Below, piece by piece: positions 10,988 to 44,357 of a stretch of DNA of 64,000 nucleotides. Below the pieces are notes generated by a model. The model worked only from the letters and a program-made list of their open reading frames with translations. It ran no database searches and was not told the origin of the DNA. Source of the DNA: Lytechinus pictus (Eukaryota). The position numbers and the translations under genes are program-made. The DNA lies in NCBI RefSeq assembly GCF_037042905.1, contig NC_087259.1:30752001-30816000 (forward strand), given 5' to 3'. Every line of letters begins with the position of its first letter. Within the stretch, counting starts at the first letter, position 1.

Positions 10988-11077
10988 CTACATCATACAT
11001 GTATTTGATGTTTATGGAGCAAATACACTTTATATATTTCGAAATTGGGTTGGAATAGGAAAAGGGTGAGTACATGT

Positions 11078-17273: not shown

Positions 17274-18077
17274 TCAGAAGAACCTTATATTCTCATCACC
17301 TTCATTGGGTACAGGCAAGCGATATGCGGGCAAAGATATCTTCCTAGCTTTACTTCGATCTTCGGTTTTCATTAGGAAACCTTTTCTAGGTCTACTAGAG
17401 CTCAGGTCATTAACAACATCATCGACGAAGCGAACTCGATGTTGATGTCCGTTAGTTGGACTGCCAGCCTTAATGGTGTTGTTGTTAAGGTGTCTTATCC
17501 CACTGACTTGCTGCGACGTCGGACCCGTATGTACCGTGCATCGTCTACCGTTCGGACGTCGACTCGACATCATCGGTGAGGGTGACGAGACGCGTTCGGT
17601 CTCGCTGCTGTTGTCGTGACTGCTACTGCTCTCGTCGTGGTGCGAGTCGTCGCTCGACTTCGCTCCATTGCTTCTATCATCCTCCGACATCGACATTCCC
17701 CTCGTATCGTGTAAGCTACTAATAAGTTTCTCATTTGCTTTGTTCAGTGCGTTAATCTGTTTTTCTTGCTTCATAACCTGTCGTTCCAGTTCGCGTATAC
17801 GGCGATCCTTGTCACCAAGCTTTGAAACAATTTCTTGCCTCTCTCTCTTGAGACATCCCTCAAAGTACATCAAATCAGAGATGAGATCGGTAAACTGGGA
17901 GTCTTTCTCGTGTGCTTGCGACATGATTTTATCTTCGCTCTCTTCGAGTTTGAGTTTCCAGCCAGCTAAGAGTTGTCTTGTTCTTGTCTTCTGTAGGTCC
18001 ATCTGATGGCCCATCTCACCAAGGGTAGTCTGGGCTGCAGCCAGCTTCTCTCGGAGTAGCTTTACTTCGCTTTCCAA
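17274..18077 (-). CDS. Terminal coding exon (267 aa): SynGAP/DAB2IP/RASAL2-type C-terminal coiled coil plus Ser-rich disordered tail
   Basis: The longest ORF in the window, with higher GC than its flanks. Acceptor TTTTGTTCTTTTTGTCTGTGCAG|TTG (phase 0) at 18078/18077. Recalled similarity to the RASAL2/DAB2IP coil: EVKLLREKL~EITKLKERL, KLEESEDKIMSQAHEKDSQ~RLEDSEERLRRQQEEKDSQ, QEKQINALNKANEKLISSL~QEKRIVSLDSANTRLMSAL. Confidence 0.9.
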   Translation of the reverse strand: MESEVKLLREKLAAAQTTLGEMGHQMDLQKTRTRQLLAGWKLKLEESEDKIMSQAHEKDSQFTDLISDLMYFEGCLKRERQEIVSKLGDKDRRIRELERQVMKQEKQINALNKANEKLISSLHDTRGMSMSEDDRSNGAKSSDDSHHDESSSSHDNSSETERVSSPSPMMSSRRPNGRRCTVHTGPTSQQVSGIRHLNNNTIKAGSPTNGHQHRVRFVDDVVNDLSSSRPRKGFLMKTEDRSKARKISLPAYRLPVPNEGDENIRFF

Positions 18078-18165
18078 CTGCACAGACAAAAAGAACAAAA
18101 TGTACATCGTAAATGGACTAAATCTTTAACAAAAATAAAATTTGATCGATTCATGTCATTGATAT

Positions 18166-18450
18166 GGGTCGTATGGTCCAGTGGTAAGAACATTGGACTT
18201 ATAATCGCAAGGTTGTGAGTTCGAATCCCCACTCTGCCATTGTCTCCACTTTGATTTAAAAAAAAATCCTTGATCTGTCGTCTATAAGGTCAGCCATTAT
18301 GACTGAATAACCTAGACGTAAAATGTTTCCAAGGTACAGTATTTGGTTATATACCAGCTTGGCGATTACCAATAAAACGCTGTCCTGCCGAGTTCCTACG
18401 GGGGTTACCATCAAACAGAAACAAAACAGAAACAAAACAGAACAGAAACA
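18166..18450 (+). mobile_element. tRNA-derived SINE with (AAAC/AAACAG)n tail
   Basis: A box TGGTCCAGTGG (18174-18184), B box AGTTCGAATCC (18218-18228), simple-repeat tail at 18410-18450. Confidence 0.7.
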
Positions 18451-18543
18451 GTTTTGTAACTGAAGACGAAAAAGAGAGAGGTATGGGGATATAGGGGATC
18501 CAATATAGAGAGATAGGGGATGAGATGAAAGTGAGGGGTAGGT

Positions 18544-18574
<31 letters not shown>

Positions 18575-21500
18575 AGATAGAGTGGAGAGAATTTCAACAA
18601 AATACATTACAACAATATTTAGATTGGTATTATCCGTTGCCAAGTTACATCGTATGGGAAGAGAGCTAAGGGAATAAGAAGCCTCCCAACTAAAATACAT
18701 ATTCATTCTTTTCTTTTCTCCAATTTAAACGATTCTTAATCTCCAGCAAGAAGAAAATGCAGCATATTGTAAATCACGTCTTGAGACCTTGTTGTACTTT
18801 GGAAATCAAGTAAGGGAAGCTCCAGAAGAACTGGAGGCAGAGAAAGAAATTTCCTTGTATCTTCAATTGTGTGGCAAGACAGTTCGTAGAACTTCAGCTG
18901 TTTTGCAAACACACTTTCTAATTCAGCGAGCAAACTTGAAAAAGAGGGAAGCTCTGGGGCAGCTTAACAAAACCAAAAAAAGCCAAGATAAGAAGTAATT
19001 TTATGCCTCTAGATGAACAAATATGTAGATGGCATACCTGACAGGATTTTAAACACTGAAGTTAATGAGGTCGGGCTATTACAACGTCCCCTATCTAAAT
19101 ATCAGCAAATATTTCGTTTACATGCGTTATTAGGACCCCACGTGCAGTCTCGTCTACTTTGACGGGATTTTTTGGTGCGTTTTTTTATGACAGTTAACAT
19201 GACGCAAATAGAGAACTGCGGTGGGAGCAATATTAAATTATTTTTTTTATGTATTTCTGTCACGAACTGTTTTTTTTTTCATTATTTGACGTTTGCTTTT
19301 GACATGTTTTAAAGAAAGGGATAATTTTGAAAATCCACCTCCTCTTTCTCTCCTTCCTTCCATACGCGCATCCTCTTCCTCTTTCTCTCTTCTATTTCTC
19401 ACATTCTAAAACAAGTTGATGGTACCGAAAGCTTCGAATTTTCATTCGTGAAGAAAATGAAATAAAAGAACATTTCCCTTGTTTACAGAATATTCATAAT
19501 CTACCATTTTGATTGATGGGCAGGATCTGAGTTGTCATGAAATATTTTTATCAAATCTTCTGATACAAATCGGCAGTGTTGCGCATGGTTTAACATGAAA
19601 TCTCATCTTTCCACACGTCTCGTGAATAATATATTCTACACAATCAGACAATGGATTCCGAAAAACAAAAGAATAATGGTGCTGTATTTAGTGTCATCCA
19701 TGACAGAATCTGTATTTTCTCCGAGATTTCTACTTGACACTTCCCCCATAGAAGACATTTTGCCATTTAACCGATGGCTACAAAAGCATGACGATAACCT
19801 CTCCAAGGTTTGAACAAAATCACACTCGTCAGACTATTATATGTACCAGAGTAATGTCACTTGATTGATGTTTAATCAGATATTTTAATAGATAAATGCG
19901 AGATTTAATAATCACATGCAATTTTGTTAAATGTTTTATCAACCCTTGGTTTAATCGAGTTAACGTTATTGTTATAGTTGCTAAAAAATGGGCTCAATGT
20001 CTTAATACGAAAAATAAATCAGATACTTTGGCATAAGAACAGATTCATACTTACGTTCAATAAACGGAAGGATTTGACAGGAAATGGATATAAGAAAAAA
20101 ATGTCCCAGATTTCCTAGCTTTTATACCGAAAAGCGCAAATGCGGAACAAATCCTATAGTATTTCTTAAAGGGTTAGCTATGATCGCAAACAGTGAAGTA
20201 TTAACCTTTAGAACCAAAGCATTAGACTATTATATCACATTGTGTGTACATGTAATAGAATTGAAAAGTTTGAGGTTTTGAATCGGAAACGGAATGTCAA
20301 TTTCTTTGACTTGCTTCAGTGAAGTTTGTGAATTTTCGTGTCTTTTGTATAGCTGCACGTCGACGGGTTACCAAAAGGTGAAATTCCAGGGTAACTTTTA
20401 TAATTAGGATTTTTCTCATAAATTTGATCCAATTAGCCCCCAAAACGGAAGGGGAATATGCACTGAAATTATTGTCTATACATTTGAATTATGTTCACGT
20501 TAAAGCTTGCAGCGGTGCTCAAAAGTAAAGTGTTTATGTTATGACAATTTTTTTTTCTACATTCAACATTCAACGCTCAACAATCTTGATTTTTTTATAT
20601 AATGTAATTAAACAGAATACAATTCCATAATATTGTTCAGATACTCCCTTTCAAGTTGTGGCAAGGTATAAAGATCGATTTTTTTTTCTTCCTTTGCTGG
20701 TCTTAATTGATGTAAAAGTTTTTCTTGACTTATATACCGATATACAATAAGTTGCTTTTTTTTACTTTTAATTATACATCAGACCTTACTTTGTTTATAG
20801 AAACGGGAAAAATTTGTATCACTGAAAAAAAGATGGTTCTTTGTGAGAACTTCAGAAGAATGGTATCTCCGTGGAATCTACCCCTTAGAGAGTTTCAGAG
20901 TCTTTTGTCATACATCATTTAGCAATATTTCTATTATACCAGCTCGTTATTTTGATGTGATTCTTGAAAGGATTACAATGGGATGTGACAAAAAACGGGT
21001 GGGTAGATAATGGATGGAATGGATCAAATTGTGACCTGAAAATGTTGGATTCATCAATTCGTGAGAGAAGCGTGAGAAAAGAAAACATCTACCATGATGT
21101 AAAGGACTAAACCTATCACAAATTTTACTGAAACGAACTGGTGTGAACACTGAACTATAAATCATCTAGGAATACAAATCGGCGTAAATTCCTGCAGAAC
21201 ATCAATATACATTACAGTTATTGGAACCTAGGTAAGGTTAATTAATACTACGGAAAAGATACTAGGCACTGGTATTCCATATCCATATTCAATCCTCTAT
21301 GATAGTATCAGCAACATCGACGAGTCAAATGAAAATTGAAGCCCGTTATTTTTACTTTTCGTCGTCAGAAAGTTTAACGATTGCTGACATTCCGTGACGG
21401 ATACCATACATTTATCCCATGGATATTTGAATATAAATTCGTTTCTTCTTTCAACAAATGGCCTAGAAAAAAAGAAATACACTGATCTTATGAAATCAGT

Positions 21501-24034
21501 GAAGAACTTCATTCACCGCCGGATTCACCGTTAAGAAATTGGCCTCCAAATTAACGTTCCCATCGCAATTCACTGGGAGAGGAGTCGATTTTTTTTTGGG
21601 GGGGGGGTGGTGGAACTAACCTTAATAAAATGGTTCATTAAGACTCTCATTACTTTCCTGTCTTTCACCCGACATTATCATGTAGAATAAGTTGTTTATC
21701 ATCACAAACTACCCTTCATCTTCAAATAATCTTCTTTCCCCCATCGGTTTCGCCTTAATGGGTTATTAACAATACCTTACACAGTAATCAATACGAGTGG
21801 AACAGGAGAGTTGACTAGGGTTTGACTAATATCCCCTCTTCTTGAGGTCGAAAAGATTCGTTCCAAATTAGAACTGGGAGTTTATTATATTGACTGTTTG
21901 CTATCCATACAATGTACTTAAACATAAAACGTTAGGTCACTTTGTTGAATTAATGTAAACACTATTGAATGACGTCACAACAAACGTCTCGATTCTAAAC
22001 AAGGTAAACATGTATTTACCAATATCCGTTACTTTGGTTATGTTCTCGGGATAATCGTAGTTCTAACAATTCAACGCTTTCTGAAAAAGAAACAGTTTGT
22101 AGTGTTCGTTAAAAATACAATATTCTTCGTCATAATTTGTTTACTACTGGTTTGCTATCGGTTACAAAGACGGATAAAACCGACTTCCTCCTAAGTCCTA
22201 ACAAAAGAACGGAAGCTAATGCCGCGCATTTAACATAAAACATAAAAACATAGGAACACGAGATCTTGAAGATTTCCCTTTGGTTTCCAATATGAAGAAC
22301 AACCTGACAATATTCTCTACAATCATGACAATCATGACGATGTTCTAAGAATTAGGATGAGTAAATTGCTTGATTTATTTAATCATCAGCAAAACCTAAA
22401 CATTCATGTACGTATAAATCTATATTATCAGGTAAACGTATTTTAAGGATGGTTGAAAATATCATCAATAAAATTTGGAGTTCCAAAACTATTCACAAAA
22501 CCAGTAGTTACTGATGAAAATTCAGTTTATTTCAAGTTCTGAATTACAATTTACGGGTTATCTATGATAAATGAAGACAATAAATCATTATTGTAGTCCA
22601 ATATGTTTGCTCTAGTTCATTATTTCCCAACAAGCATCCTGCGTCCCACGTGGGAACAGTAATACTGAATCTCAATAGCTAAACACAAATAAAAACAAAC
22701 GTAAACGTTCGGCAATTATACTTGACTTTTTGTATAGAACTGGTACATGGAAATAACTGCATCCAACATTTGATCTTCTTTATTCGTTACCAAAGCTTTT
22801 CGCAAAAATGTTTGTTCGTTTGCCAATAGTTATTGCCAAGAGTTAACAACTCGAATAGCAATATTCGATTCTCGTTGGTAGTACAATCACGATACAATAT
22901 TGATCTAACCTGAATCTGTCACAAACGCATTCTCTATACCATGTAAACGATCCATCACAGGTATAGTGATTGACGTGTGTTACGCCATTCAGTTTGGTTT
23001 TGATTTTTTGTTTGATGAAGGGGGCGGGGCTCTTACAAATAATTAATATTATATAGCCAAATTGATTATAATTGTATATCTACACCGTTTTTAAACCAAT
23101 ATTGTTATACATCAGTATAATCTATGTAAATAATGTATGTATATTTTGTAATGCCAACAGAGTGAATTTCCATTGAGGACAATAAATTAATGAATCTGAA
23201 TCTGAACCTGATATCAGCAGTCAGTGTTAAATGAAGTAGAACATTTTATTATTCATAATCGTAATTATCTTGTCTCGGTCAGGGCCCATAATCTTTCTCG
23301 CCTGGGACACCCAAACTAAGCTATGTATTATTTATTTTCGAAGCCCATTCTCGGATTGAAATGTCAATAATTAACAGTAACAACCTCTGCACTGGCATGG
23401 TGGAATCAGTACGTTATGAATGCAATCTTTTAGGTCAATTTCCGACTTTCTGGTTGGTGAAAACAGGCTGCCTCAAATTCAGTCAGTCAGGTTTTTTTTA
23501 AGCATTTTGAGAGAGGTTTTTCACAGGGTTATTCCACATTTTCTGTTATAACAGTTTACATACACCAAAAGGTCAAAATCTGCCCTATTCCTTAGAAATT
23601 AAGCAGGTAATGGTCTTGACCATTTCTATTAAAGATAGCACTTCTGCCCACTCCTATTATTACATCCCATTGTAGGCTCACTTTTCTGAAGGGCATCACA
23701 AGGTTGTGACAGCTTGGAATTTTACATGGCATGTATATTTTATGTAAATGTACTCATGCGAACAAATATACAAACACTGTGGATTGGTTTTACATGCTGA
23801 GTGTGTAAATATAACGAGAAAGAATTATTCTGCACTTAACTGCCCCAAAGGATACGTACTCTGTACCAACGTGTTATTCTTGATGTCGTTTTAACCAATT
23901 TAACTATTTTAAATATAGAAACTAAAACATCAATTTCACCATAAGCATGACTGTGCAAAGTGAAATATAGATTGTCTTTATTTTGGTAAGATGACAAGAA
24001 AACATCAAAACACACAAGATGAAAGAATGAGAAA

Positions 24035-24320
24035 NNNNNNNNNNNNNNNNNNNNNNNNNNNNNNNNNNNNNNNNNNNNNNNNNNNNNNNNNNNNNNNNNN
24101 NNNNNNNNNNNNNNNNNNNNNNNNNNNNNNNNNNNNNNNNNNNNNNNNNNNNNNNNNNNNNNNNNNNNNNNNNNNNNNNNNNNNNNNNNNNNNNNNNNNN
24201 NNNNNNNNNNNNNNNNNNNNNNNNNNNNNNNNNNNNNNNNNNNNNNNNNNNNNNNNNNNNNNNNNNNNNNNNNNNNNNNNNNNNNNNNNNNNNNNNNNNN
24301 NNNNNNNNNNNNNNNNNNNN
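24035..24320. other. Assembly gap (286 N)
   Basis: Run of N. Confidence 1.
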
Positions 24321-25787
24321 ATAAGAGGAAAATAAGCAGATAAAGAAGTAGACGAAGAAGACTGTCATCGATAGATCAAGCTAAGAATTTTGATAAGAAC
24401 GGCATCTACATGGAATGCAGCTATCATTAATAGATAAACAAAGACAATAAGTAAGTTTGTCTTGCTGAATAGGAACTTAATATCAGGTTATCTCTCGAAT
24501 AAGAAAAATCGATACATTCTGTACCTTTATATCGAAACTCAATTAAATTTTCAGGATTTAGAAGATTCATTTTTAAGCAATTACTAGGTTGATGTTACAA
24601 TAAAAATCAACGTTTAAACATGCCAGGAGAGAAGTTCGAATAAAAACTTACAAAAGTGACTTTTTTCATGCTACTCTTCACCTTGAATCCACCAGCTTGA
24701 TGCTTTCCTAAAATTTGTTCCTGATGACATCGCTTTAACTGTAGTATATACATGCAAGCGAGACGCAACCATGACTATTGGCCACAAGTAAAAACAAATG
24801 ATATTTTTACATAAGCAACTTCTGAATGTAACAACTCGTTCTAGAGGTGCGAAGATGCGTTCCACGAAAGAAAAACAAAACAAAAATCAATTTCGCTCTT
24901 TTCACCCTTGTCATAGCGGTAGACCCCCGTCAAGTTCAATTGTTTATGCTCATTGGATATGATTATGGGTTGCGACATCTGAGGTCGTCAAAGACAATGG
25001 ATACTAGCACATAAACAAAAGTATATACGATGTAAACACTTTGTGGGGATGCGAGACATTTAAACGTCACTGGTTCTATGCGACGCACCATACACGTTCA
25101 ATGTCAAAACCCTGTCTAAATGGAGTAACTTTCACTCATCCTAGACTCGGCATGCTTCTTCGGTCCTTGAATGCTACAATTTCCATATAGCGTTATTTCA
25201 CTGTTATGTGTTATAAAACAAACAGGCAATTTAAACAGGCAATGTTGATGGTATGTATATCATGTATATGAGCTCGAGGAATTAAAGAGGTTTGAAAAAG
25301 TGAAAGATAATCCAGTGAAAAATAATCCAGTATTTTTCCTGTAGCCTACGTTCCCGGCCTATGTTATTGTCCTGAAAAATCGTCAGATAATATTCTGGTG
25401 TAGGTACTTTACGTTTTGCCTTTTTATTGTTATGTTCTAACTGAAGTGATTTGAGATTTTGAGGCAAGTTCTCGCTTAGGCAATCATACTTATTTTGCCT
25501 AGCCAGCAAATAATACACTGTTCTTAAAATTCTGTCTTTAGTATAGATTTATTCATCCACATGCAAACAAAATTTTAAGATATATTTATTGAACATGTGT
25601 CTACTCGGTAATTTTTTGCTACATTCTGCAGTTATCCAAGTCTGCAGTGGGTGATAACATGCTATTTAAAGACCTGTTATAATCCACTACTTCGAGACCT
25701 GGATGATTTTACAGAGCGAGACAGGATGATGGAGGCAATGTAACAAAGCAAAGATTGCATTGCAGTCGACATGCCGGTAATACTTAC

Positions 25788-25841
25788 TTTTATTAAATTT
25801 TTACCCACGTACACAAGCCTTTCCTTTCCTTTGGTCAGCAT
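25788..25841 (-). CDS. Possible alternative first coding exon (MLTKGKERLVYVGKNLIK)
   Basis: ATG with an upstream in-frame TGA and a phase-0 donor AAA|GTAAGTA compatible with the terminal exon. Signal-only evidence. Confidence 0.25.
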
Positions 25842-26946
25842 TGCAACATTTCAAACTCAGATGAGTTATTGATACAGGAAAAAAAGTAGTGCATCCTCGA
25901 AAAAACATAGATATTCCGCTCAAAGTCTCCAGATATGTAATATAAAGGGAATACTGGGCAGTATAGCGTTCGTGTAAAGTAATAAGATGTCACAAAGACA
26001 CAAGTTTCTGGAGCTCGTTAGATTACTGCAAGTCTTTCAGAAGACGAACTGAGAAATGGCAACAAAGAAATCGTCACATTTAACGAGTGCTCAAGCAGAG
26101 AAAGAAACGAAGTATCCCCCTTTTTCGACTGGACAAACAAAAGAGTAAATGCATTTAGTTCGTGTGCATGCGAAGCTCCAATGATTCACTAAGCAAGCCG
26201 CATACCTTTTCAACTGTGACTTCTGTCAATAGTCAACCCCATACCCCCCTGCCTTCTTCCTGCCTTGAAACATTTGAAATCTTATCTCTCGTTTTTCATT
26301 GTTTCACATCGGGCCTTATTTATTTTAAGCATTAGTACAATGACATAAGTTGCCATACGAATCACCTGAATTATCCCAAATATTGAATAATTGTGACAAT
26401 ATATAATTTATACATTAAAATCCTCAGATGTATCGTGATGTGATATCTATGTGTCGGTTGATTGCTCAAATACATCTGCTCATATACTTACGACTCTAAG
26501 TTTCATATGGCTTTCTTTCTCCCCCTTTTACCTTTTCTGTCTTATTTTCCCACTCTTTCCCCTTCACATTCCCGTCACCAAGCGCTCATTCCCCCTTATC
26601 TCTCAATAATTCTTACTTCCTCGTAAATTTGTATCTTCCCATCCATTTCTTTCCGCTTGTGTCCAAATATTTACCCTTCCAATTTGATTTAACGATTCCA
26701 CCAGGAATTTGTCAAGTCATTAACAAAACTAAGACCACCTATCCTCAGAAATCAAACAAATGTTTCCGTTTTTTTCTCTTAGATATGCTAAAATGTGGCG
26801 TTGCTGAGGAGAATTCATCTGATAAAAAGATCTTTAAATTTACTTGAAGTGATGGGGGGGGGTGAAAACTGACCGAGTCCAGAGTAAACAAAGGCTCGTG
26901 TGTATCACGCTGCAGTCACACCAAAGAAACCGAGCTATGGTATGAC

Positions 26947-26954
26947 CATCCATG
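26947..26954. mobile_element. 8-bp CAT-CCATG remnant between 7-bp duplications (putative footprint)
   Basis: GTATGAC-CATCCATG-GTATGAC (26940-26961). Confidence 0.55.
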
Positions 26955-26964
26955 GTATGACATT

Positions 26965-27180
26965 GGAGGTGTCGTGGCCAAGTGGTCTAAGGCGCCGACT
27001 ATACATTGTCTGGGGTTCGATTCAAACCACGGCACCTATGCCCATGAGCAAGGCATTTAATCGACAGTGCTCTTTTATCCTGCATTCAAATAAATGGAAA
27101 TGCAATGCATTTTCTGAAACTAGGTGTGGACTTATCTTTTTTAAATGGTAATAATCATGGTAAAGCAGGCCTAGCAGCTT
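26965..27180 (+). mobile_element. Degenerate tRNA-derived SINE
   Basis: A box TGGCCAAGTGG (26975-26985), B box GGTTCGATTCA (27014-27024), core-like TGCCCATGAGCAAGGCATTT. The 3' end is approximate. Confidence 0.65.
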
Positions 27181-32987: not shown

Positions 32988-35900
32988 CAATAATCAATTG
33001 ATGAAATGAAATTCATGAACATGCTACACTTTCGTATAAAAACAGGAATGCAATAGTCGTTTTCGGCCATTATTATGTACCATATAAAACATAAGGCCTA
33101 TCAATAGTAAAAATCCTTTAAAAACTTACCCATTTTGATTATTATGCACACTGTCAATTAGGGAAATATGTCGGGAAAACCCACACCGCGACAACTTTTC
33201 GAACAGGTATGTTTAACTTCTATAGTATTCTGACGATCTTATAATCAAAATGATGTTCTGCAGTATTTTATGAATGATTCACAACTTCAAAAATACCTTT
33301 TCTCTCAATTTATATGGACATGACTATAAATAAACCTGATATCCTGGTAAAATAATGTACCCACGCATACCAGGAAAAATCAAATTCTCCCTTTGAAACA
33401 GTTTAACAATGAGTTCTTTCTCACAACATACCCGTATAATTTTTGTTGTTTGGATTGCGGACGTTTCATATTTCCAATTCAACTTTAGACAACCGTAATT
33501 TGAATCTCATGTCGCCGATGATGAAATTCATACCCAACACGAGAAAAAAGTAACACGTGTATAAATGGACGATGAAACGATAGGAGGGAAGGGACTCAAA
33601 CAAAGACAGTATTGGGAGAGGAGGAGACCAGAAATTAGGTAAAATCCCGGAGTAAAATAAATTGGTTAACATTGATTAAAAGTGTAATTCGGTACACGAC
33701 CACATGACATGCTATCTAGGCAACCATATTTGGCATTGTACGAATGAGGGAAACGGAGAATAAAGGAAAATATTCTCTTTTTTTGTAAAAGGAAAAGTAT
33801 CAAACAAGGGTGGCCCAAAAATATTCAATAAATCTCCTGGTGTGACCGAAGATGGCGCACTTTAAGACGGCGTTCGATGCACTGATCGATGGCACCACCT
33901 CAGTAAACATGGTAAACTAGAATGATGAAGGGGGAGGGGCGTTCTGTGTCGAAATTATATCAGTATAAAATTATGAGTCTTTCAATTTAACTTCAAGTTA
34001 TATAAAATGTATGAACTGTGTTTCCGTAAAAGGCAAACAACAAAATTGATACGATATATATTTTTTTTCTGACGGCGTATCAACAAGTTATACCTTCCCG
34101 GACTTCATTGCACTTTTTATTACCAGAAGATCCTTCATATCATGTGTATTAGAGTCAAGGTTAATAGAAGAGTCTATTCCCCATCCAATGCCATTAAAGT
34201 ACAGTGACGTCATCTTAACATTGATGATATCAAAAGTGGTTGCTTCGAATTACCACCAGTTGAAGAACATCTACGCTTTGAACAAGGAAGCTTGATTTCG
34301 CCATAGTTAAATGACCAAAGAAAAACATATTACCGTTGGGGAGATAGAAATGGAATTTAAATTAGTGAGTCTGTATTGTGAGAAACTTTCCATAAAGATG
34401 AGAATTTATACCTCGACCTTATCTAATATTTGTGATGCGGATCTCAAATAATAGCAGGCATGACAACGCGAGCATCACCTTGCTGCTATGTTAGGAAGAC
34501 CTCCTTCATCCCTTTATGTTGTGACAACTACATTAGTTTGAAAGCAACTGTGTAATTTGACTGTGTTTTGTTTTGTCAGTAGGCCTATCCAATATTCATT
34601 GTGCCCACTGACAGTGATACAGTTCGTGATACGATGAATGTCAACATTTGGCATTCTAGTTGAGCGCCCTCTGCGGTTTAGTAATCATATTTGGTAAATG
34701 TCGATAACAGAAAAGCAGTACAACACATGGGAGCACTGAGAAATTTGTACTAAAAATGAACTAGATGAAGGAGAAGAAATAATGGATTACAAAACCCTCG
34801 TGAACTGCAGAAGTATTACCGTTAAATGAATATATTTTGGACTTGTAGGAGTCATAAACAAAAATATTTTCAAGTTTCCCAGAGGGCTTAAAAACTTTGC
34901 TATCGGTTTACATTGATCCACACATTTAAGATTTTCTCTTGACTTGTTTATTAACTTTCCCTTCAGCTGATATCTACCATATGTTAATAAATTTGAAAAA
35001 GATCAGATCTTATGAAACATATTGTTTCTTTGAATAACATAATAAACAGGACAATAATATATCTTTATTATTATCTTCATGATGTCATGTTACGTGCGTG
35101 CATGGTTCCAAACCATTTAATGTCAGGTCACTGGTTGCCATAATACCTCACCAATAAGGATGACGTATTGTATACATGCCCAAGCCTAGTTGTTCACTTT
35201 GCTACGAACCTGTAACAATATACAAATCTTATAACAAAGAAACAAAAATCGATGTAACTGGTGAACCCCAAGTTCAACGTTGTATACAGCCAATTTGCCA
35301 AGTCACATTAGCACCTCCCGGCAATATATGGCATTGTTAGTGAATGAAAAGCCACGATCTAATCGGGCCATGTAGTTATTGTATCAAAATGATGGTTGCT
35401 TTTCGATGAAAGGAATGTAGTGTATACCAGGGTTCAGATTCAGATAATTTAGTCGAGTATATATATGAAATAATACTCCCTACTCTAACGCAATACAATA
35501 CAAAAAACGATGAGGACTTACCAAGGGGATAATAACCCCAGTCCCATGTAGGCTATAATATCTGCCTATTCTAGATCCCTATGAATACATACAGATTAGA
35601 CTGTTTTCATGGTTTTAGGCAACTTTCTTAGACGAAAAACGGTTCAGAAAATTTACGTATAATACAGTATATTTTAAATATTATTGATGCACCATACTAT
35701 AAGCATTGCCATCATGGTAAACTCAGTCATACTGAAACCAATGTCTCTAAAGAGTGTTTCCCACTACAGAAAATCATCGGTCAAAACTTTCTCCCAAGAC
35801 ACAAATGAAGATAATTAGACGTTCCTTTGACTGTAATCTACCCGACACAATGGAGGTATTAACACACACTCGACATATTCAAATCAGCGGGGGATAAAAG

Positions 35901-38900
35901 AAGGACTCCGTTTGGTGTCTCCTCACAAACTAAGCCAGAAAGATATAGCCAGAAACAAAAAATCAATGATTCGTGTATATCATTATTCTTTTTTTATCTA
36001 AAACTTTTGTCACAAGACAAAACTTAACTAAAAAATTTGGAACAACAGTGTACTGAAAGAGATTTTGTTTTAGAAATTGTCTTACAATGAAAGACAAATA
36101 ATAATGTTGTGCTCTTATACACGTTGAATCATGTCCGTCAGACATTTTCTACGACTGTGTTAAAGACAGTTTGAAAGGAAATGAACGGATTCGTTTTTAT
36201 TTATCTTTAAATGAGAGTAGTAACGTTGGCAACCACATTTATCTCCTAGTTTGTACAGAAAAGGAATTCTTCCGGGAAGGGGGGGGGGTCCAACCCCTTC
36301 CTAATTAGGTCTTCATCATCCTCATAAAATGTCACTAACGAGAATGACGTCGTTCCTTTCAGAGAGTTTAATGAACGAAGGGTTATACGCTACCATCCGT
36401 TTCAAAACTAATATTCCGTAATAACTTTCGCCTGGCTCCTTGGCTATCGTAAGGACCAAGGGGGGTGGTTCTTCTTTTTATTTGGCAACCAGTCAATTTG
36501 ACTATTTTCGCCATCATAAATATTATATTATTAACGTTTGTTTTATTTGAAAAAAAAAGGTAAATGAATAAAGTAAAATTAACATATTTATTTTTTTTTT
36601 CTTTTTTTTTTCCTTTTTCTTTTCTATGTCTTTTTTTAATGGATATCTACTAGGATTTAAAGTCGAGTAGGTGTGTTTCACAATTTAAAACCAGGGCTTT
36701 TACTGAAAATATGTTAGATATAAGGGACTTCGATCGCTTTGACCTCTCGTCAAGCTTTAAACCACCTTTAGAACTCTTTTGTTGTACACGATGTTGATCC
36801 TCTGTTAATTCCTTGTCAGTGAAAGCGGCTTGATGATCTCATTAAGGGCTTGGTATTTTGGTACTATTATGAGAATGACTTTCAATTTCAAAGTCTAGTC
36901 GGGACCCGAATCTTTTATGATCCACGAACCCGGATTCAGGACATTCTTAAGCTTTTTTATTTACTAAAAAAGGAAGCGATCATCTCTCCACGAGACAGGT
37001 ATTAGATATGTGTTTGTTAGACATGTTGACATTACCATGGTTACGTATGTTATCTACTTAAGATGAAGACTCATTTTATTTTTTGTACCTCTCTCTCTCT
37101 CTCTCTCTTATTATATGTGCTTATCTTTTACATTTTACAACCAAAACACACGCACACCCATCCCCTCTCTATATCTGCTCTCTGCTCTTTTAAGCTCCCA
37201 TTCAGCAGAATCATTTAAAATAGATCGGTTTTGATACCTTTCCACTGAGTCAATCCATGTATTGTATGTACAAAGAAGTGCGTGAATTTCGATATGAATT
37301 TCAGAAACACAACTCCATTATTTACTTCTATGCAACTATCTATGGTATCACTATTCACATATAAACGACCTGTTACAAACGAGGGTCATTGTTCAGTATA
37401 TCGTTATCGTTGGATAGAAAAACAGCCCGCTGTGAAATTGACCACGACTTTTTGTTATTCTTCGATTTCAAATCGATCTTTTAAAAGCAAGCCTAATTGT
37501 TTGGTTTGGGTTTAATGACGGTGTAAGGGGTCGGTAATCTTTCCATAAGAAACGTAGGTTTGTTTCTATCAAGGTTTTCTTCATTTAATTTATAATATAA
37601 GACGAACTCACTACTGGATTTTAATAAGATTTTCAGAAATTGTCCACTGGCATGACTGGGTCTGTATTTTAAATGGGAGAAGGATGACATTTACATTTTA
37701 TAAGTTTTAAACTGAAAGTACTTATTAAATTTTAAAAATAAACATTGTGCGAGTATAATATTGCAAGTTTTTTCAACTCCTCAGCTCATGTAACTCCAAA
37801 AATGTCGGATGAGGGGACAGGGTGATGATATATTATTTATCTACGATACGAATTTCTGGTCAGGGTGTTGATCATGATGATGATGCAGGTAAAAAAAACG
37901 TATTAGTTTATCAGAGAAAAGACTATCGACTCTTGAACAAAGGGCCCCGGCCCCCTAATATCTTTAATGGTGGATGGATGATGTTAAGCGATATGACTTT
38001 CAGATACTACCAAGATTAAAAATATCTTTATTACTAATTTTTTTTTTTTCGTTTCAAAGTTCCAGCAAGAACTCATAACTTTGCGTTACAGTAGACAGAA
38101 CATTGACAGTTGAATTGATTTGACTGCTGCCGATTTGAATTACAAAATAAGAACAAACTTCGATAAAATTGACAAAGGGGATAAGAAGCTTTGGTGGGGA
38201 GTAATAGATACTTTCAGAAAATCAACACGAGATAAAAAGAGAAAGTTCCAGCGGGACACCAATCAATAGTATCCCTTTACTAACACTAGGATCAAACCCC
38301 GCCTTAAAGAAAAAGGATGTTTCACTTGACCGCCTGAAATAACCTATTAACTTCAACAGTTTAGTCTTCTGCACCAGGCTAAATCAGTAGTGTAATAATT
38401 ATTGTTTTAGAATACCGTATGAAGGGAGGTGGATTATATTTGACCTAATACAGGTTTGTCTCGTCTTGTACATGATAAAAAGATAAATACACTTATAATC
38501 TTGCGAACAAATACAAAGAAATATAATTTTAAAAAATGGAATGAAGTCTAACGTAGTTGATGTAGGCCTCATGACTGATTTTTGTTGTTGATAAATTTTG
38601 TCTAAATTTATGTTTTCTATGGGTAAATCATTGTGGAAATAGAAGTCATTAAACATATTCCATACAATCGAACTCAACGGATACCGAATTCTTAATAATA
38701 TAATTAATGATAGACCACCTAATGACATTTTTAATAATTCAAGATCAGAGGAAATCCTGGGATAAGTCTTATAGGTTACACCTTTGCGATCGTTATTTAG
38801 TAATCGCTTGATCGCTTGGAATGCAAGAGAACAATAGAGATGCAAATAGGACATAATTGATGTGTTTGAATTTGTGCACATGGGATGTCACCTTATATAT

Positions 38901-39400
38901 ATAACAAGGACATCTCAAACAACAATTAAAGTCAGTTTGACTAGAAAAGAACAACACAAATATATAAAATTAATTTCAAACAAATACCCCTTACTATAAT
39001 GTAAGCAAATTTACACAACCTTCTGAAACTAAATCACCCCGCCCAACATGGAGCCATGAATAACAAAAATAATGCAGCCCATTCAATACCAGAAATTGAG
39101 TTACACAAGTTTCAATATGTTCAACATTTATTCATTTAAAGATCGAATTATGGATTTCTTGAAAATGCTCGGCTCATTTTCAATAAGAGAGATGAACAAT
39201 TGAAACCAGTGTGATCTTTTAATGATAACATAATTAGTCTTTCAAATAAAATTTAATCAAAATACAATTGAAACTGAAGGGCAAAACACGTTTATCACAA
39301 TCCATTGTTATCTCACCATACCTGTCAAAGAAATGAAATAATGATCTCTGTGCGCTCAATTTGAGGTGATATTGAGTCATAAATATAAATAGGTTCTATC

Positions 39401-39442
39401 CATAGAGTTAAATACGTACTCTATACATGATATAACTCTATT
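39401..39442. mobile_element. 42-bp CATAGAG-type remnant (putative footprint)
   Basis: CATAGAGTTAAAT ... ATATAACTCTATT between a perfect 8-bp TSD GTTCTATC (39393-39400, 39443-39450). Confidence 0.7.
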
Positions 39443-41226
39443 GTTCTATCAGGGGAGATGGAAGTGAAATTAATTACTCAGAAATTGCTTTCAGATAACA
39501 AATGTTTATTACTATTTTGTTACCGAGATAAAGCGATGACTTATAGAATGGCGAGCATGTGAATGTCGCCAGGGATACAGATATTTAGTTTTGAGCTGTA
39601 CTCTCTCAGACAATATAATCCATGCTCACTTTATGCATCTTTAATAACATGGTCCTAGTCATGTTTTGTATTATCTATTGCATAATGTACACTGCATGAA
39701 TTGTATATTGATACTTTTATGGTTGAGTAAATTGAAATTGAAAAATACTGAAAATCTGGTGGATAATTGTATTTCCTTATATTGGGATCATAAAATTGAT
39801 TCAAAATGATATCAAATTTTATTTCATTTTTAGCACGTGCTATCTCATTTGAATAGCACATTATGATGAACGTCTGACTGAAATAAAAATGTCTTCATTT
39901 TCCGTTATCGTGTTAACTTTTTTTGGCAGACTATACATAATTTTCATTTATGCACCAGTCCATTTGATCTTTAGCAGACGATATTCACGCGCTATAAACG
40001 CTATGCAATCTTTTCGAAATGTCATCCCTTTCTGGTATTCGGTGCCACTTGCGGGGGAAACCCATCTAATACTGATAGCCACATTAATCATTCTCCAATA
40101 GAAGGGTGTCATAAAGGGTATAGGGAAGTGGTGATTAACTGTCAAGAATTGACAGTCATTTTAAAGAGACTGCTTTGTTGGCTTAATTGGTATACGAATT
40201 CAAAACTTACACACTTAATACAAGGAGGTTGTTTATATTATTGGAAGGCCCGTGTACTACAGATTTTGGCTAAATGAAATGACAGTTCCTCTGCAATAGG
40301 TTTTGATAACAATTTTTCATATCGATTTGATAAGGAACAATAATTGTCCACTGGAACAGCTAACAGAGAGTTCCGTAATTTTATTTGTTAATATAATCTG
40401 AATCTTCATGACTTATCTACATTGATAGACTAGACAACATGTATGTCGTTTACATTGAGATAATTTGACAATAATTATCAAATACACAGGCAGAATAACA
40501 ACGGAAACACTATACACATAGCTATAATTAAATACGATTTCGAAATCCCTTTTTCAAGAGTTTGTACATGCACCTGCGTATGCAACATTTCAAGAGTAGG
40601 CCGACATTATAAATGGGGCAATCTTCCCTTTTCATCAGGACCGCCCATTTTTACTATTAATGCATGCATCAATACGTTGACAAGGAAAAATGCAACAATC
40701 ACAATACTGAAGAGGGTGTCTCAACCATGGAAAAATACATTTTCTACTGTAATATTTTTTTCAAATGAGATTTGGTCTAGCGGGGATATTGTATGAGTAT
40801 ATTTTATATAATATGTTTGTGAATCCAGTTGTTTCACTTGATTGATTTGAACTCCATACTAAGTTCAATTCAATATAAATCTTTTCTATAAACTGGAAGA
40901 ATTTTTTTTTACAATTGGTCCGCAGGGGACCATTCCGCCATTGGAATTTTCATTCATATTTCTTGTCAATGATCTCAGTGTAAAAAATAAAAAGAAGAGA
41001 GTATCTTTGGCTTGAAAACAAAATTATAAAAAGTTCAAGAATAGATTGGCAAATTCGATTTACAATGTCATTTGCCCATCGCTTTAAGATCAATTTTACT
41101 AACTCCTTTATTTCCATCCAACAAAATGGCCCGACGTTGATATACAAACATAGAAGGAGTATTGCCTTGTTTCAATATTCTATTCTTAAATCTATTTTTC
41201 GATAAGTCCCAAACCATGCAATTAGT

Positions 41227-41759
41227 TATTATTATTATTATTATTACTTATTATTTGTACTGCATGCGCTTTTCCCATTAGGCCCAAAGCGCTTACAATG
41301 AATTAATTAAATGCAACATTTTAAGAACTACAAAGTACGAAAGAGATGAGTTTTTAATGACTTTTTGAAAATTGCTAATGTTGGAGACTGTCTAATTATT
41401 AGTGGCAGGTCGTTCCAGGATTTTGAAGCCGACACCGTAAAAGTTCTGTCACCAGCTAATGTACGAGTTAATGAATATGTGAGGCGAAGGTGATCACTGG
41501 CCGACCTAAGTGCTCTAGTTGGTGTATACAGATTCAAGCAGTTACTTAAATACTGTGGAGCCTGTTTATTCAGTGTTTTGTAGACAATCAAGAGTAATTT
41601 GAACGTAATTCTCTGTTTAAAAGGAAGCCAGTGAAGAGAATTAAAGAGTGGTTGGGAAGGATGATCTCGGGAAGCCTTTAAAATTAATCGTGCTGCCCAA
41701 TTTTGTAATCGTTGAATACGGATTAATTGATTAGAGGGAATTGTAGAAATTAGTTGACT
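41227..41759 (-). mobile_element. 5'-truncated L2-clade LINE 3' end
   Basis: Open frame reads RIQRLQNWAAR..SLHWLPFKQRITFKLLLIVYK..APQYLS..LRS..GDRTFTV..WNDLP..FKKSLKTHLF*. It is followed by a short 3'UTR with an AGCGC..AGCGC L2-type tail motif and (TAA)n. Confidence 0.9.
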
Positions 41760-43496
41760 TTAGATCTTGGAAATTTAGAGTATGCGTTAACTTTCAGATT
41801 GAGAGTATAATTTACTAACATACTTAAGATTTGTATTCACGATGCGTCCTAAAATTATGAGATAACTAATGGCTAAAGGCCCTTTCTGAGCATGTCCCCA
41901 TCTTGGTTTTCATCCAAAAGAATTCAAACTAAAAAAATCCTATCGATCTTTGTTTGGCACTCAAAAGTTCCTGAAGCTTCTTTTGCTCAAGACTAGTAGA
42001 TCAATACGATGCGTTCTATGCCTATCATCCAAGGTCGACTACAGGTTAATTTGATTTTAGATAAAACCATCATAATATACAAACGAGGAGAATCTGTCGA
42101 ACCCCTAGCGAGCTAGCGAACACAAATTATCATAGGAAGATATCAAATGTTTATTCAAAAACACATTGAGAACTTGTACATTCACAGGTGCAAAAACATT
42201 GAATATCTATCTTGCAAAACGAACCCCGAATGGGGGTTGTGTCCGTAACGACAATATTACCTTAATCAAACGAAAACAATACTAGATTTGCTTTCATAGA
42301 TTATGTAAACAAAATTCTACATCAACTATGAATCAACATTGTGTCGTGCTACATTAAGGAAAACCGGGTGTTATTCTTTAATAATACGGAAAAAAACACA
42401 CAGCCAGAAGGGGAAGAAAAGAAGAAGAAAGAAAATGTAAGGAAAGATATATGCTTTGTATGTGTTACTACAACAATGATCTTTTCTTTTTTTGCACGTT
42501 AGGTATAAATCAAGCTTACCTTAAGGCCAACTTGGGCCACCCTCCGAATACATAGAGAGAGAGATATATATATATATATATAAATTTATATCGTGTCGGT
42601 GCCCCGCCCCTAGATCCCGCCACAAAATGCTTAAGGATTGTTATACATACAACCCTAACGTATTTTCTTTTACTCTGTATTTATGTGTTAACTTAATTTC
42701 TTCTATTATTTGAAAAATAACTTCAATATATTCACAGGATTGGTATAAAAATGAACATTATGTATGATTTTTTTACAAAACAATCAAAGTAGGTGACGAA
42801 ATACATCCTACAAAGTGCATGTACGATCTGTCGTATATATCCGCATCACCTGTTTAAACACTTAACATTAGTAGACCCCTTTTAGACAGTTTAATAACCC
42901 GACCATCTGTGCCAGCGTCTACAGTGTTACCATGGCAATGCTGACATATCATCGACTGGCAAAACAAACACTGCAACATTATGCGTATTTCATGGATGAT
43001 GTTTCATAGAATAGACATTCAATAGAATGGATAGTAGAATGGATAGTATAAAATGACTAAAACTAATCGATGTTACGAACAAAAACGTAGCCTAAAGAAC
43101 TCCGCTGATTAATCCTAATGCACTGATTCAAGTCAATAATTCATTGATAATGTGAGAGAAAGGAATGGTGTGGTTTTTATCAAGGGCACATTAAATCGAA
43201 CTTAAAGTTCGACGCTCTTCAAATCATGTTTGGTCGGTCGGATCATGGACCGAATCCAAGGGTGTGGATCATCAAGATTTGTTAATAGAAATAATAGTTT
43301 ACCACAAAATGGAAATATGTACAGTAGAAAGTAAATATGTAATACATGAGAACATACCGATATAATCCAGTCACAAAATAATTAACATTGTTAAGATTTT
43401 CCATTGTCAGAGAGGAGGTAAAAAGAACTAGAAGTTAAGATGAGTTAAGCTTGGTTCCCAGCATGCCTTGTCAGCCAGTCTCCCTTTGGGTATGAC

Positions 43497-43523
43497 CATG
43501 GACCTATTACCTCCATCTCCTTG
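43497..43523. mobile_element. 27-bp CATGGA-type remnant (putative footprint)
   Basis: CATGGACCTATT..TCCTTG between a perfect 7-bp TSD GTATGAC (43490-43496, 43524-43530). Confidence 0.65.
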
Positions 43524-44273
43524 GTATGACAAAAAATGTGAATGTGAAGGGAGAAACTCTGTTTCAGTCCCAGGAGCAAGTGGTTCCACCCCGTAATTTG
43601 GCCTGGGCTTACTGTCATTTCCCTCTACTTCTTATCGATTGATAAAGCCTCCAAATTGACAGATTTCATGATGATGATGATGATGAATACTGGAACGAAT
43701 GACCTTAGATTACATACAGTAATTTTACTTATGTTGTCTGTTATGGTTTTATTAACTCACTTCCTTTATTATTTCCTTTAGCCCCCAACACGGATTTTAG
43801 AATTGTGTAAATTTATAATCAACTGCATGGTTTGTCATAAGAACTTTCTTCTATTTATTTTTTCAATTATGTTTTATAATCTGGTTAATATGGTGGGCCA
43901 CTCTTTCACGGTAACATCAGGCCTAAAAGTAAAATGCAACCGCTCACGATGAAGATGTTCGTCATGAGACGAATTCGAACTCAGTACTACCATTTCCCGT
44001 TTAGTTGTAGATTTCAGAGGCAATATCATTGGGATAGTATCTCCTTGGCAATATCTTAATTTATGCATGTTAACCATGTTTAGATGAATGACCAGGGGCT
44101 TTGATTCCTGGTCGTGAATGAAAATCATCATCAGTATGGTGTTAGGGATTTGCAGACGTGCAGCCAATGCTGCTGGATGTGTATGGGTAAGCCAGTAAAT
44201 GCCATAGACCAAATCTCATACGAACCGACATATTTATTTCAATATAGATATTTAAATGTGATGAATTTCTTAC

Positions 44274-44357
44274 CTGTTGTTTAGTCTTTTCGCCTTTATA
44301 TCGGCCTATTACGTCCGAGTCTGGCGAGTGCATCATTCGTTGACTAATATCCTTCAT
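44274..44357 (-). CDS. Probable first coding exon of the coiled-coil gene (MKDISQRMMHSPDSDVIGRYKGEKTKQQ)
   Basis: ATG with A at -3 and an upstream in-frame stop at 44475-44477. Strong phase-0 donor CAG|GTAAGA at 44274/44273 matches the phase-0 acceptor at 18077, and EKTKQQ|LESEVKLL continues a helical pattern. Confidence 0.55.

What the first reader, a model, noticed from the sequence alone, without database searches (positions are those of the whole stretch)
17274..44357. GAP-less SynGAP/DAB2IP-type coiled-coil gene (~295 aa) across a 26-kb intron
Seen: exon 44274-44357 (ATG, upstream stop, promoter-like flank, phase-0 donor) can splice in frame to the terminal exon 17274-18077. No PH, C2 or RasGAP-coding sequence was recognised anywhere between 18 and 64 kb. 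Established: in SynGAP this C-terminal coil mediates trimerisation and normally follows PH-C2-GAP domains. Inference: the locus encodes a stand-alone oligomerisation module, either a separate paralog or a short internal-promoter isoform. It could hetero-oligomerise with the canonical RasGAP and act as a scaffold or dominant-negative regulator.
Basis: partly seen in the sequence, partly recalled or inferred. Interest (0 to 1): 0.7.

Follow-up and report, generated by a model that had tools for sequence, protein, structure and literature searches.

The report
Stand-alone SynGAP-type coiled-coil gene
This is a real, expressed two-exon sea-urchin gene, already in RefSeq as an uncharacterised protein, that encodes only the coiled coil of the SynGAP/DAB2IP RasGAP family plus a motif-bearing tail, and it belongs to an old, unstudied family of such GAP-less proteins.

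Summary
Exon 44357-44274 (minus strand) splices in frame to terminal exon 18077-17274. A transcript contig from a sister species crosses exactly this junction.

The 295-aa product differs by one residue from Lytechinus variegatus XP_041481001.1. The window is Lytechinus pictus, and two models using other first exons equal RefSeq LOC129278092 isoforms exactly.

The terminal exon matches Pfam DAB2P_C positions 392-506 (E 4.5e-14) and the SynGAP coil 5JXC. No PH, C2 or RasGAP coding lies at 18-64 kb.

A coil tree splits canonical RasGAPs from short proteins at 100/100. The window coil sits with short orthologues from all five echinoderm classes; hemichordate, amphioxus, annelid and arachnid short proteins fall on the same side.

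So this is a separate ancient paralogue, not an internal-promoter isoform. Conserved tail motifs (HRVRF, RKISLPAYRLP) suggest an oligomeric adaptor. Pairing with the RasGAP coil is modelled (0.64 against 0.01) but unproven. The assembly gap lies inside the intron.

The parts
44274..44357 (-). Coding exon 1 (ATG plus 27 codons, MKDISQRMMHSPDSDVIGRYKGEKTKQQ) with a phase-0 GTAAGA donor. It is the conserved first coding exon.
   Evidence: sequence and translation.: the spliced contig's loose end maps uniquely to 44277-44306; identical to the N-terminus of L. variegatus isoform X1. Diadema homologue.
44358..44850 (-). Putative 5' UTR and promoter-proximal region. The extent is inferred, and colinearity with the genome is not shown.
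   Evidence: the X6 contig carries 576 nt upstream of the junction (84 nt CDS plus about 490 nt); in-frame TGA 120 nt upstream of the ATG, and 16 upstream ATGs within 600 nt, so the UTR may instead be spliced.
18078..44273 (-). Intron of 26.2 kb. It holds the assembly gap 24035-24320 and two alternative first exons.
   Evidence: direct junction; depth about 0 at 18100-18163. (the gap flanks are AT-rich non-coding sequence).
25788..25841 (-). Alternative first coding exon (MLTKGKERLVYVGKNLIK) of RefSeq L. pictus isoform XP_054770285.1 (285 aa). It is not conserved outside Lytechinus.
   Evidence: window model equals P0050 exactly. (no homologue in other taxa).
24652..24753 (-). Alternative first coding exon (MYILQ...KKVTF) of RefSeq L. 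pictus isoform XP_054770284.2 (301 aa).
   Evidence: window model equals P0047 exactly.
17274..18077 (-). Terminal coding exon: 267 codons plus TGA, with a phase-0 acceptor at the start of the coil.
   Evidence: (RNA-like contigs and raw RNA reads cover it and stop at 18077). (10 synonymous against 1 non-synonymous among the listed differences to the sister species).
17691..18077 (-). Coiled-coil region (exon residues 1-129, protein residues 29-157). It is homologous to the SynGAP/DAB2IP/RASAL2 C-terminal coil.
   Evidence: PF12004 positions 392-506, E 4.5e-14; 5JXC, E 4.8e-5; single helix over residues 26-157 with block-mean pLDDT above 90 from about residue 31 to 150; weak end-to-end similarity to the neighbouring gene's coil, with one extra heptad.
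17427..17441 (-). HRVRF motif (protein residues 241-245). It is a conserved island in a disordered tail and fits the RVxF-type PP1-docking pattern.
   Evidence: V243, R244 and F245 conserved in at least 90% of 21 orthologues. (coordinates). The match to the PP1 consensus rests on my own knowledge; PMC6544628 only states that such consensus sequences exist.
17313..17345 (-). RKISLPAYRLP motif (protein residues 273-283). It is conserved in all echinoderm orthologues and fits R-x-x-S-x-P, the pattern of a basophilic-kinase or 14-3-3 mode-1 site.
   Evidence: R273, S276, L277, P283 nearly invariant.. The motif reading is inference from general knowledge.
15948..17273 (-). 3' UTR of about 1.3 kb, with a poly(A) signal at about 15964.
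   Evidence: the 2130-nt X1 contig starts at 18077 and covers 16500-18077, so its remaining 552 nt must lie below 16500. AATAAA/ATTAAA at 15964.

Best explanation
The locus is an independent protein-coding gene of Lytechinus pictus, RefSeq LOC129278092 'uncharacterized protein'.

Gene structure. It has a short first coding exon and one large terminal exon. The conserved first exon is 44357-44274. Two lineage-specific alternatives are annotated at 25841-25788 and 24753-24652.

Protein. The roughly 295-aa product has three parts:
- a short N-terminus;
- one continuous helix of about 130 residues, homologous to the trimerising coil of SynGAP/DAB2IP/RASAL2;
- a disordered, Ser- and acid-rich tail with conserved short motifs (HRVRF, RKISLPAYRLP, C-terminal IRFF).

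Origin. It belongs to an old family of GAP-less coil proteins. The family arose by partial DNA-level duplication of the 3' end of a DAB2IP-type RasGAP gene, and the phase-0 intron at the start of the coil is kept. The split probably pre-dates the protostome-deuterostome divergence. In L. pictus the gene still sits 24 kb downstream of the canonical RasGAP gene on the same strand.

Mechanism (inferred, not shown). The helix forms a parallel coiled-coil oligomer, a trimer by analogy with SynGAP. This oligomer displays several copies of the tail motifs, so the protein acts as a multivalent adaptor. It may recruit PP1 through RVRF and a kinase or 14-3-3 through RKISLP. It may also co-assemble with the canonical RasGAP coil.
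For: Homology: PF12004 E 4.5e-14; SynGAP coil 5JXC E 4.8e-5.

Expression and splicing:
- RNA-like contigs and raw RNA reads cover the exon and stop at 18077.
- One contig joins 18077 to 44274.
- The 3' UTR ends near a poly(A) signal.

Annotation: window-derived models equal XP_054770285.1 and XP_054770284.2 exactly.

Selection: 10 synonymous against 1 non-synonymous among the listed differences to the sister species, against 26 differences listed in 774 nt of 3' UTR.

A separate canonical gene:
- PH at 114 kb, C2 at 106 kb and RasGAP at 95-90 kb in window-based coordinates.
- A linker exon at 80.9-79.0 kb.
- Its own coil exons at 78729-78527 and about 68850-68670, ending in a stop.

Family:
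- Short orthologues of 220-400 aa, with the coil starting at residue 18-32 in the named members, occur in urchins, starfish, brittle star, sea cucumber, crinoid, two hemichordates, amphioxus, Capitella, spiders and a scorpion.
- The two-exon structure is conserved.
- The amphioxus locus is under 1 kb with no RasGAP exon within 10 kb either side. The Saccoglossus locus is also under 1 kb, with 10 kb upstream and 3.7 kb downstream held.
- The tree separates canonical and short coils at 100/100, and the window coil lies inside a 100/99 echinoderm clade.

Structure: one helix over residues 26-157 with block-mean pLDDT above 90 from about residue 31 to 150, and a disordered rest.

Tail motifs: nearly invariant across the 21 aligned orthologues.
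Against: - No experiment or paper addresses the protein.
- In L. pictus itself the partner of 18077 was not seen directly.
- The oligomeric state rests only on homology and on a structure model.
- The RVxF and 14-3-3 readings are pattern matches, and such patterns are common by chance. Only their conservation argues for function.
- Protostome members carry a different tail (RDVKKR...FFSFAF), so a tail function, if any, is not family-wide.
- In the tree, some 'canonical' rows are fragments that I classed by their ...SSC C-termini.
Confidence: 0.8

Rival explanations
1. Alternative last exon or internal-promoter isoform. Here the 18077 exon is mainly a second, mutually exclusive coil-encoding 3' end of the upstream canonical RasGAP gene. 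It would be reached by splicing from the linker-exon donor across about 61 kb, and the short transcripts would be minor.
For: The two genes are on the same strand and in tandem. Both coil acceptors are phase 0 at the same aligned residue, so the splice would be in frame. Organism-A contigs break exactly at 18077, as expected when several upstream partners exist.
Against: - The canonical gene has its own complete coil and stop codon.
- The only junction seen goes to 44274.
- RefSeq models in two species are stand-alone.
- Amphioxus and Saccoglossus orthologues are compact stand-alone loci with no RasGAP exon in the flanks held, 10 kb on each side except 3.7 kb downstream in Saccoglossus.
- The coil tree puts the exon in a different, ancient family.
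Confidence: 0.07
2. Dedicated decoy. Here the protein's main role is to co-assemble with the canonical RasGAP coil into mixed trimers. That would dilute or retarget GAP activity in a microProtein-like, dominant-negative way, and the tail would be secondary.
For: - The ESMFold2 complex of two canonical exon-A coils plus the window coil (residues 1-80) passed. The score was 0.64 against a best control of 0.01, a mark reached by 51 of 78 solved complexes and 2 of 108 mismatched pairs.
- The three runs agree in at least 95% of their contacts, and the partner's pLDDT is at least 83.
- The modelled contacts pair equal or neighbouring residue numbers, as in a parallel, in-register bundle.
- Genomic adjacency in L. 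pictus could allow co-regulation.
Against: - The pass may be memory of the solved SynGAP trimer, the controls were not coiled coils, and the tool warns that a pass does not tell which family member binds.
- The two L. pictus coils align only weakly end to end and differ by one heptad.
- The families are separated by a long, fully supported branch.
- The strongly conserved tail motifs argue that the tail matters.
- The two genes are not adjacent within 10 kb in amphioxus, Patiria or Diadema.
Confidence: 0.2
3. Transcribed relic. Here the locus is a decaying partial duplicate of the RasGAP 3' end, without protein function.
For: It lies next to its presumed parent. It has several non-conserved first exons and a 5' region with many upstream ATGs.
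Against: - The 267-codon frame is intact.
- Listed differences to the sister species are 10 synonymous against 1 non-synonymous.
- Orthologues with the same architecture and motifs span several phyla.
Confidence: 0.03

Closest known systems
C-terminal coiled coil of SynGAP / DAB2IP / RASAL2 (Pfam PF12004 DAB2P_C, positions about 390-512; PDB 5JXC)
   Same: Clear sequence homology over about 120 residues. It is predicted as a single long helix. The phase-0 intron sits at the same aligned residue as in the neighbouring canonical gene. In SynGAP this coil drives trimerisation (PMC7314543).
   Different: No PH, C2, RasGAP or linker region. The coil starts at about residue 29 of a 295-aa protein. 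It has one extra heptad relative to the L. pictus canonical coil. The tail motifs are different, whereas canonical invertebrate proteins end in ...SSC. The tree separates the two at 100/100.
RefSeq LOC129278092 (L. pictus) and LOC121428455 (L. variegatus), 'uncharacterized protein'; UniProt 'Disabled homolog 2-interacting protein C-terminal domain-containing protein' (Patiria, Capitella)
   Same: It is the same gene or its orthologues.
   Different: These are automatic annotations with inconsistent names: nGAP, RASAL2, SynGAP, golgin-like, interaptin-like. I found no description of the family, its age or its motifs.
MicroProtein or Id-type regulators: small paralogues that keep only the oligomerisation domain of a larger protein (a concept from my own knowledge, not tested here)
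   Same: It keeps only the oligomerisation module of a multidomain relative. A mixed trimer with the canonical coil is modelled with confidence.
   Different: The split is ancient and the sequence similarity is weak. The protein has its own conserved tail motifs, and no evidence of actual hetero-assembly exists.
PP1-targeting subunits with an RVxF docking motif (general knowledge; PMC6544628 cited only for the existence of consensus patterns)
   Same: A conserved HRVRF lies in a disordered region and is followed by acidic residues. It is retained in echinoderms, hemichordates and amphioxus.
   Different: Binding is untested, the motif class is common by chance, and the motif is absent from the protostome-type tails.

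Membership tests
Pfam PF12004 DAB2P_C (coil part) | Score above the curated gathering cut-off (24.3 bits) on the C-terminal coil positions | tested here: met
   53 bits, E 4.5e-14, profile positions 392-506 of 512. Ten orthologues also pass.
SynGAP/DAB2IP/RASAL2-type RasGAP (the enzyme subfamily) | PH, C2 and RasGAP catalytic domains upstream of the coil in the same protein | tested here: not met
   There are no tblastn hits to these domains in 18-64 kb; they lie at 82-114 kb in the neighbouring gene. The spliced contig and the RefSeq models start 18-34 residues before the coil. Orthologues are complete at 220-300 aa.
SynGAP/DAB2IP/RASAL2-type RasGAP (the enzyme subfamily) | The coil groups with canonical RasGAP coils in a tree | tested here: not met
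   Canonical (12 rows) and short (29 rows) coils are split at 100/100, and the window coil falls on the short side.
Stand-alone DAB2P_C-coil family (unnamed; echinoderm, hemichordate and amphioxus type) | Two coding exons, with a phase-0 intron at the start of the coil and the rest of the protein in one exon | tested here: met
   Seen in the window. Also seen in Diadema, Patiria, Saccoglossus and amphioxus loci.
Stand-alone DAB2P_C-coil family (unnamed; echinoderm, hemichordate and amphioxus type) | Tail motifs: RVRF, RKISLPAYRLP (echinoderms) and an aromatic C-terminus | tested here: met
   HRVRF at 17427-17441, RKISLPAYRLP at 17313-17345 and IRFF-stop at 17277-17288. Conservation is shown.
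Parallel trimeric coiled coil (as in SynGAP 5JXC) | Self-association into a parallel three-helix bundle | tested here: inconclusive
   The evidence is homology to 5JXC and a modelled 2+1 bundle with the canonical coil whose contacts pair equal or neighbouring residue numbers (0.64 against a control of 0.01). No homotrimer job and no experiment was done.
PP1-interacting proteins (RVxF class) | A functional RVxF docking motif that binds the PP1 catalytic subunit | not testable with these tools
   The pattern is present and conserved. PP1c of this genome is multi-exon, and spliced sequences are not accepted by the complex tool, so no model was run.

The most novel reading that the evidence does not exclude
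An ancient GAP-less coil family, so far found only in invertebrates, forms mixed trimers with the DAB2IP/RASAL2/SynGAP-type RasGAP. Through its conserved RVRF and RKISLP motifs it brings PP1 and/or 14-3-3 to that RasGAP. Oligomer composition would then tune the RasGAP's phosphorylation state, localisation or condensation. This layer of Ras/Rap control would have no annotated vertebrate counterpart.
Probability: 0.1. Interest if true: 0.7.

Novelty: new variant of a known kind. Interest (0 to 1): 0.45.

Why it matters
The SynGAP/DAB2IP/RASAL2 coil is what lets these RasGAPs oligomerise and, for SynGAP, phase-separate with PSD-95 (PMC7314543).

A conserved gene that encodes only this coil plus a motif-bearing tail is a natural candidate regulator or parallel user of that assembly mode, and it has never been studied. 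L. pictus is a genetically tractable urchin, so a knockout and Ras/ERK read-outs are feasible.

At the same time the gene is already annotated, its existence is not surprising to a genome annotator, and every functional statement here is inference. Interest is therefore moderate.

Tried and rejected
- **Chance test of the first exon:** 10 look-alike candidates exist, so sequence alone could not decide.
- **ARAGORN on the tRNA-like repeat beside the acceptor:** no tRNA found.
- **Pfam on ten other window ORFs:** nothing found.
- **The look-up of encoding contigs for P0001, P0074, P0076 and P0032:** not on record, so the distance between the short and canonical genes in amphioxus could not be measured. 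I know only that they share a chromosome-sized contig.
- **Ten-kb flanks in Diadema, Patiria, amphioxus and Saccoglossus:** they show no RasGAP exon. For Diadema and Patiria this is inconclusive, because the L. pictus spacing is 24 kb.
- **Atlas search:** only unnamed arthropod clusters and generic coiled-coil families, all leads at best.
- **The search for homologous proteins with P0019:** only unnamed transcript-derived proteins.
- **Literature searches:** no paper on a stand-alone DAB2P_C protein.
- **PP1 complex model:** not possible, because PP1c is multi-exon in this genome.
- **Rejected ideas:**
  - A recent local duplicate of the neighbour's coil (the tree).
  - Retroposition (the intron is retained).
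  - A hidden exon in the assembly gap for the main isoform (direct junction).


Full report
**1. What is in the sequence**

On the minus strand, 18077-17274 follows a polypyrimidine/CAG acceptor. It is open for 267 codons and ends in TGA.

Exon 44357-44274 is an ATG plus 27 codons, followed by a phase-0 GTAAGA donor. An in-frame TGA lies 120 nt upstream of the ATG.

The two exons join in frame to give 295 aa. By itself the small exon is not remarkable: a mechanical scan finds 10 ATG-ORFs of at least 15 codons with a phase-0 GTRAG donor on this strand between 18 and 64 kb.

**2. Assembly gap**

The N run at 24035-24320 sits in AT-rich non-coding sequence, inside the intron of every isoform. No coding frame crosses it.

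The two ORFs that the ORF listing shows across it are artefacts of the Ns. A spliced transcript contig jumps from 44274 straight to 18077, so no constitutive exon of that isoform hides in the gap. I made no attempt to fill it.

**3. Homology**

- The terminal exon matches Pfam DAB2P_C (PF12004) at positions 392-506 of 512. The score is 53 bits against a cut-off of 24.3, with E 4.5e-14.
- It also matches the crystallised SynGAP coil 5JXC over 78 residues, E 4.8e-5.
- AlphaFold2, run with a 21-sequence alignment, gives one uninterrupted helix over residues 26-157, with block-mean pLDDT above 90 from about residue 31 to 150. The rest is disordered.
- SynGAP's coil is the element that trimerises and is needed for phase separation with PSD-95 (PMC7314543).

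**4. Transcript evidence**

- In two studies of organism A (2 differences in 1578 nt, so probably the window's own species), contigs cover 16500-18077 without a break and end exactly at 18077. Depth is 0 at 18100-18163.
- The 2130-nt contig starts at 18077 and covers 16500-18077, so its remaining 552 nt must lie below 16500. That places its end near 15948, 16 nt past a poly(A) signal at 15964. The 3' UTR is therefore about 1.3 kb.
- In organism B, a close relative, a 968-nt contig runs from 17689 to 18080. It continues with letters that map uniquely to 44277-44306. A further 576 nt of the contig lie upstream of it.
- Raw RNA reads of organism B cover the exon at about 30-65 per direction and vanish in the intron.
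- Among the listed differences to organism B, 10 of 11 in the CDS are synonymous. Twenty-six differences are listed in 774 nt of 3' UTR. The frame is under purifying selection.

**5. Identity of the gene**

- First exon 25841-25788 plus the terminal exon equals XP_054770285.1 (285 aa).
- First exon 24753-24652 plus the terminal exon equals XP_054770284.2 (301 aa).

All are named 'uncharacterized protein'.

Diadema setosum, a distant urchin, starts MKDTSQPIIMHSPNADVVGRYRGEKPEKTRQQ.

**6.

The window is G000:C15:30752001-30816000. Whole-genome searches place DAB2P_C and RasGAP hits just past its right end, on the same strand.

Fetching 120 kb and running tblastn with full-length RasGAPs gives a canonical gene. 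In window-based coordinates:

| Part | Position |
|---|---|
| PH | about 114 kb |
| C2 | about 106 kb |
| RasGAP | 95.6-90.6 kb |
| Linker exon (652-codon open frame; likely donor at 79018) | 80.9-79.0 kb |
| Coil exon A | 78729-78527 |
| Coil exon B, ending ...ALKQRCLTTSQH-stop | about 68850-68670 |

An earlier first-stage note on the adjacent window (s1-311639) also saw the intron that splits this coil. I confirm that intron.

The canonical stop is 4.7 kb beyond the window and 24 kb upstream of the short gene's ATG. Nothing resembling PH, C2 or RasGAP lies at 18-64 kb.

The genome has only these three DAB2P_C hits. That means one canonical gene and one short gene.

**7. Relation between the two coils**

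They align end to end with only weak similarity, and the short one has one extra heptad. Both coil-start acceptors are phase 0 at the same aligned residue. Both upstream exons end in ...KQQ.

In orthologues the Pfam match begins about 18 residues before the intron. This pattern fits a DNA-level partial duplication that kept the intron. It does not fit retroposition.

**8. It is an old family, not a local accident**

An exhaustive search returns mostly short proteins as best hits. Full-length RasGAPs come only at E of about 1e-7.

Named members are:
- urchins (Lytechinus, Diadema);
- starfish (Patiria, Asterias, Acanthaster);
- a brittle star (Amphiura);
- a sea cucumber (Holothuria);
- a crinoid (Anneissia);
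- hemichordates (Saccoglossus, Glandiceps);
- amphioxus (three species and a hybrid);
- Capitella;
- orb-weaving spiders;
- Centruroides scorpions.

Several others come from short transcript contigs that carry the whole ORF.

The two-exon layout holds in Diadema (39-kb intron), Patiria (9 kb), Saccoglossus (about 250 bp) and amphioxus (about 200 bp). In amphioxus the neighbours within 10 kb are a kinase gene and a CH-DIX gene, not a RasGAP.

A maximum-likelihood tree of the coil (41 rows) puts all 12 canonical coils on one side of a branch with 100/100 support and all 29 short ones on the other. The window coil lies in a 100/99 echinoderm clade, and the neighbouring gene's coil lies with the canonical ones.

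One caveat applies. Four 'canonical' rows are fragments that I classed by their ...SSC C-termini.

**9. The tail**

Across echinoderms, hemichordates and amphioxus the tail cannot otherwise be aligned, but two islands stand out.

- The first is H/x-R-V-R-F followed by acidic residues. V243, R244 and F245 are at least 90% conserved.
- The second, in echinoderms, is RKISLPAYRLP followed by an aromatic C-terminus (coordinates).

From general knowledge, RVRF fits the RVxF class of PP1-docking motifs. PMC6544628 only attests that consensus patterns exist. RKISLP fits R-x-x-S-x-P, a basophilic-kinase or 14-3-3 mode-1 pattern.

These are pattern matches. Conservation in a disordered region is the only argument for function. 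Protostome-type members instead carry RDVKKR... and end FFSFAF or similar.

**10. Test of hetero-assembly**

I ran one ESMFold2 job with two copies of the canonical exon-A coil (67 aa) plus the window coil (residues 1-80).

- It scored 0.64, with a best control of 0.01.
- That mark was reached by 51 of 78 solved complexes and 2 of 108 mismatched pairs in the tool's calibration.
- The three runs agree in at least 95% of contacts, and the partner's pLDDT is at least 83.
- The contacts pair equal or neighbouring residue numbers, as in a parallel, in-register bundle.

The tool warns that a pass for a family with a solved complex may be memory. Close cousins of a true partner usually pass as well, and the controls were not coiled coils. 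I take the result as showing that the short coil is still compatible with the family's bundle. It does not show that the two proteins bind.

**11. Verdict**

It is a separate, ancient paralogue rather than an internal-promoter isoform.

It is already annotated but uncharacterised, and I found no paper on it.

My best mechanism is inferred, not shown: a coiled-coil oligomer that displays conserved tail motifs as a multivalent adaptor, possibly also mixing with the canonical RasGAP.

A small possibility remains that 18077 is also used as an alternative last exon of the RasGAP gene. I could not exclude it, because the loose ends at 18077 in the window's own species were not listed.

Noticed in passing
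window 18164-18400: A tRNA-derived SINE-like repeat lies immediately upstream of the 18077 acceptor. Contig and read depth there runs into the thousands in all four runs, with many different flanks, so it is a high-copy transcribed repeat. ARAGORN calls no tRNA.
   Followed up: partly
beyond the window: G000:C15:30820670-30866240 (window-based 68.67-114.2 kb), loci L012-L017: A canonical PH-C2-RasGAP-linker-coil gene lies on the same strand. Its predicted C-terminus ...ALKQRCLTTSQH-stop lacks the ...SSC ending seen in other invertebrate canonical RasGAPs, so further 3' exons or isoforms may exist.
   Followed up: partly
window-based 79018 (L013) and window 44274: The canonical linker exon ends ...AEEKQQ|GTAAAG and the short gene's exon 1 ends ...EKTKQQ|GTAAGA. 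Both upstream exons end in KQQ before the shared phase-0 intron, which hints that the ancestral duplication included the end of the preceding exon.
   Followed up: partly
window 23922-24368 (-) and 23991-24335 (+): These two listed ORFs of 148 and 114 aa exist only because the N run 24035-24320 translates without stops. They are artefacts.
   Followed up: yes
window 17119-17238: In the sister species (organism B) a contig replaces 118 nt of the 3' UTR with 104 other letters. This is an indel or divergent segment between the two species.
   Followed up: no
window 10001-12000: A GC-rich patch (0.45 against about 0.34 elsewhere) has overlapping ORFs of about 100 aa on both strands at 9.3-10.8 kb. 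None has a Pfam match.
   Followed up: partly
window 44358-44957: Sixteen ATGs lie within 600 nt upstream of the start codon. If the 5' UTR is colinear with the genome it is rich in upstream ORFs. Otherwise the 576-nt upstream part of the X6 contig includes spliced non-coding exons.
   Followed up: no
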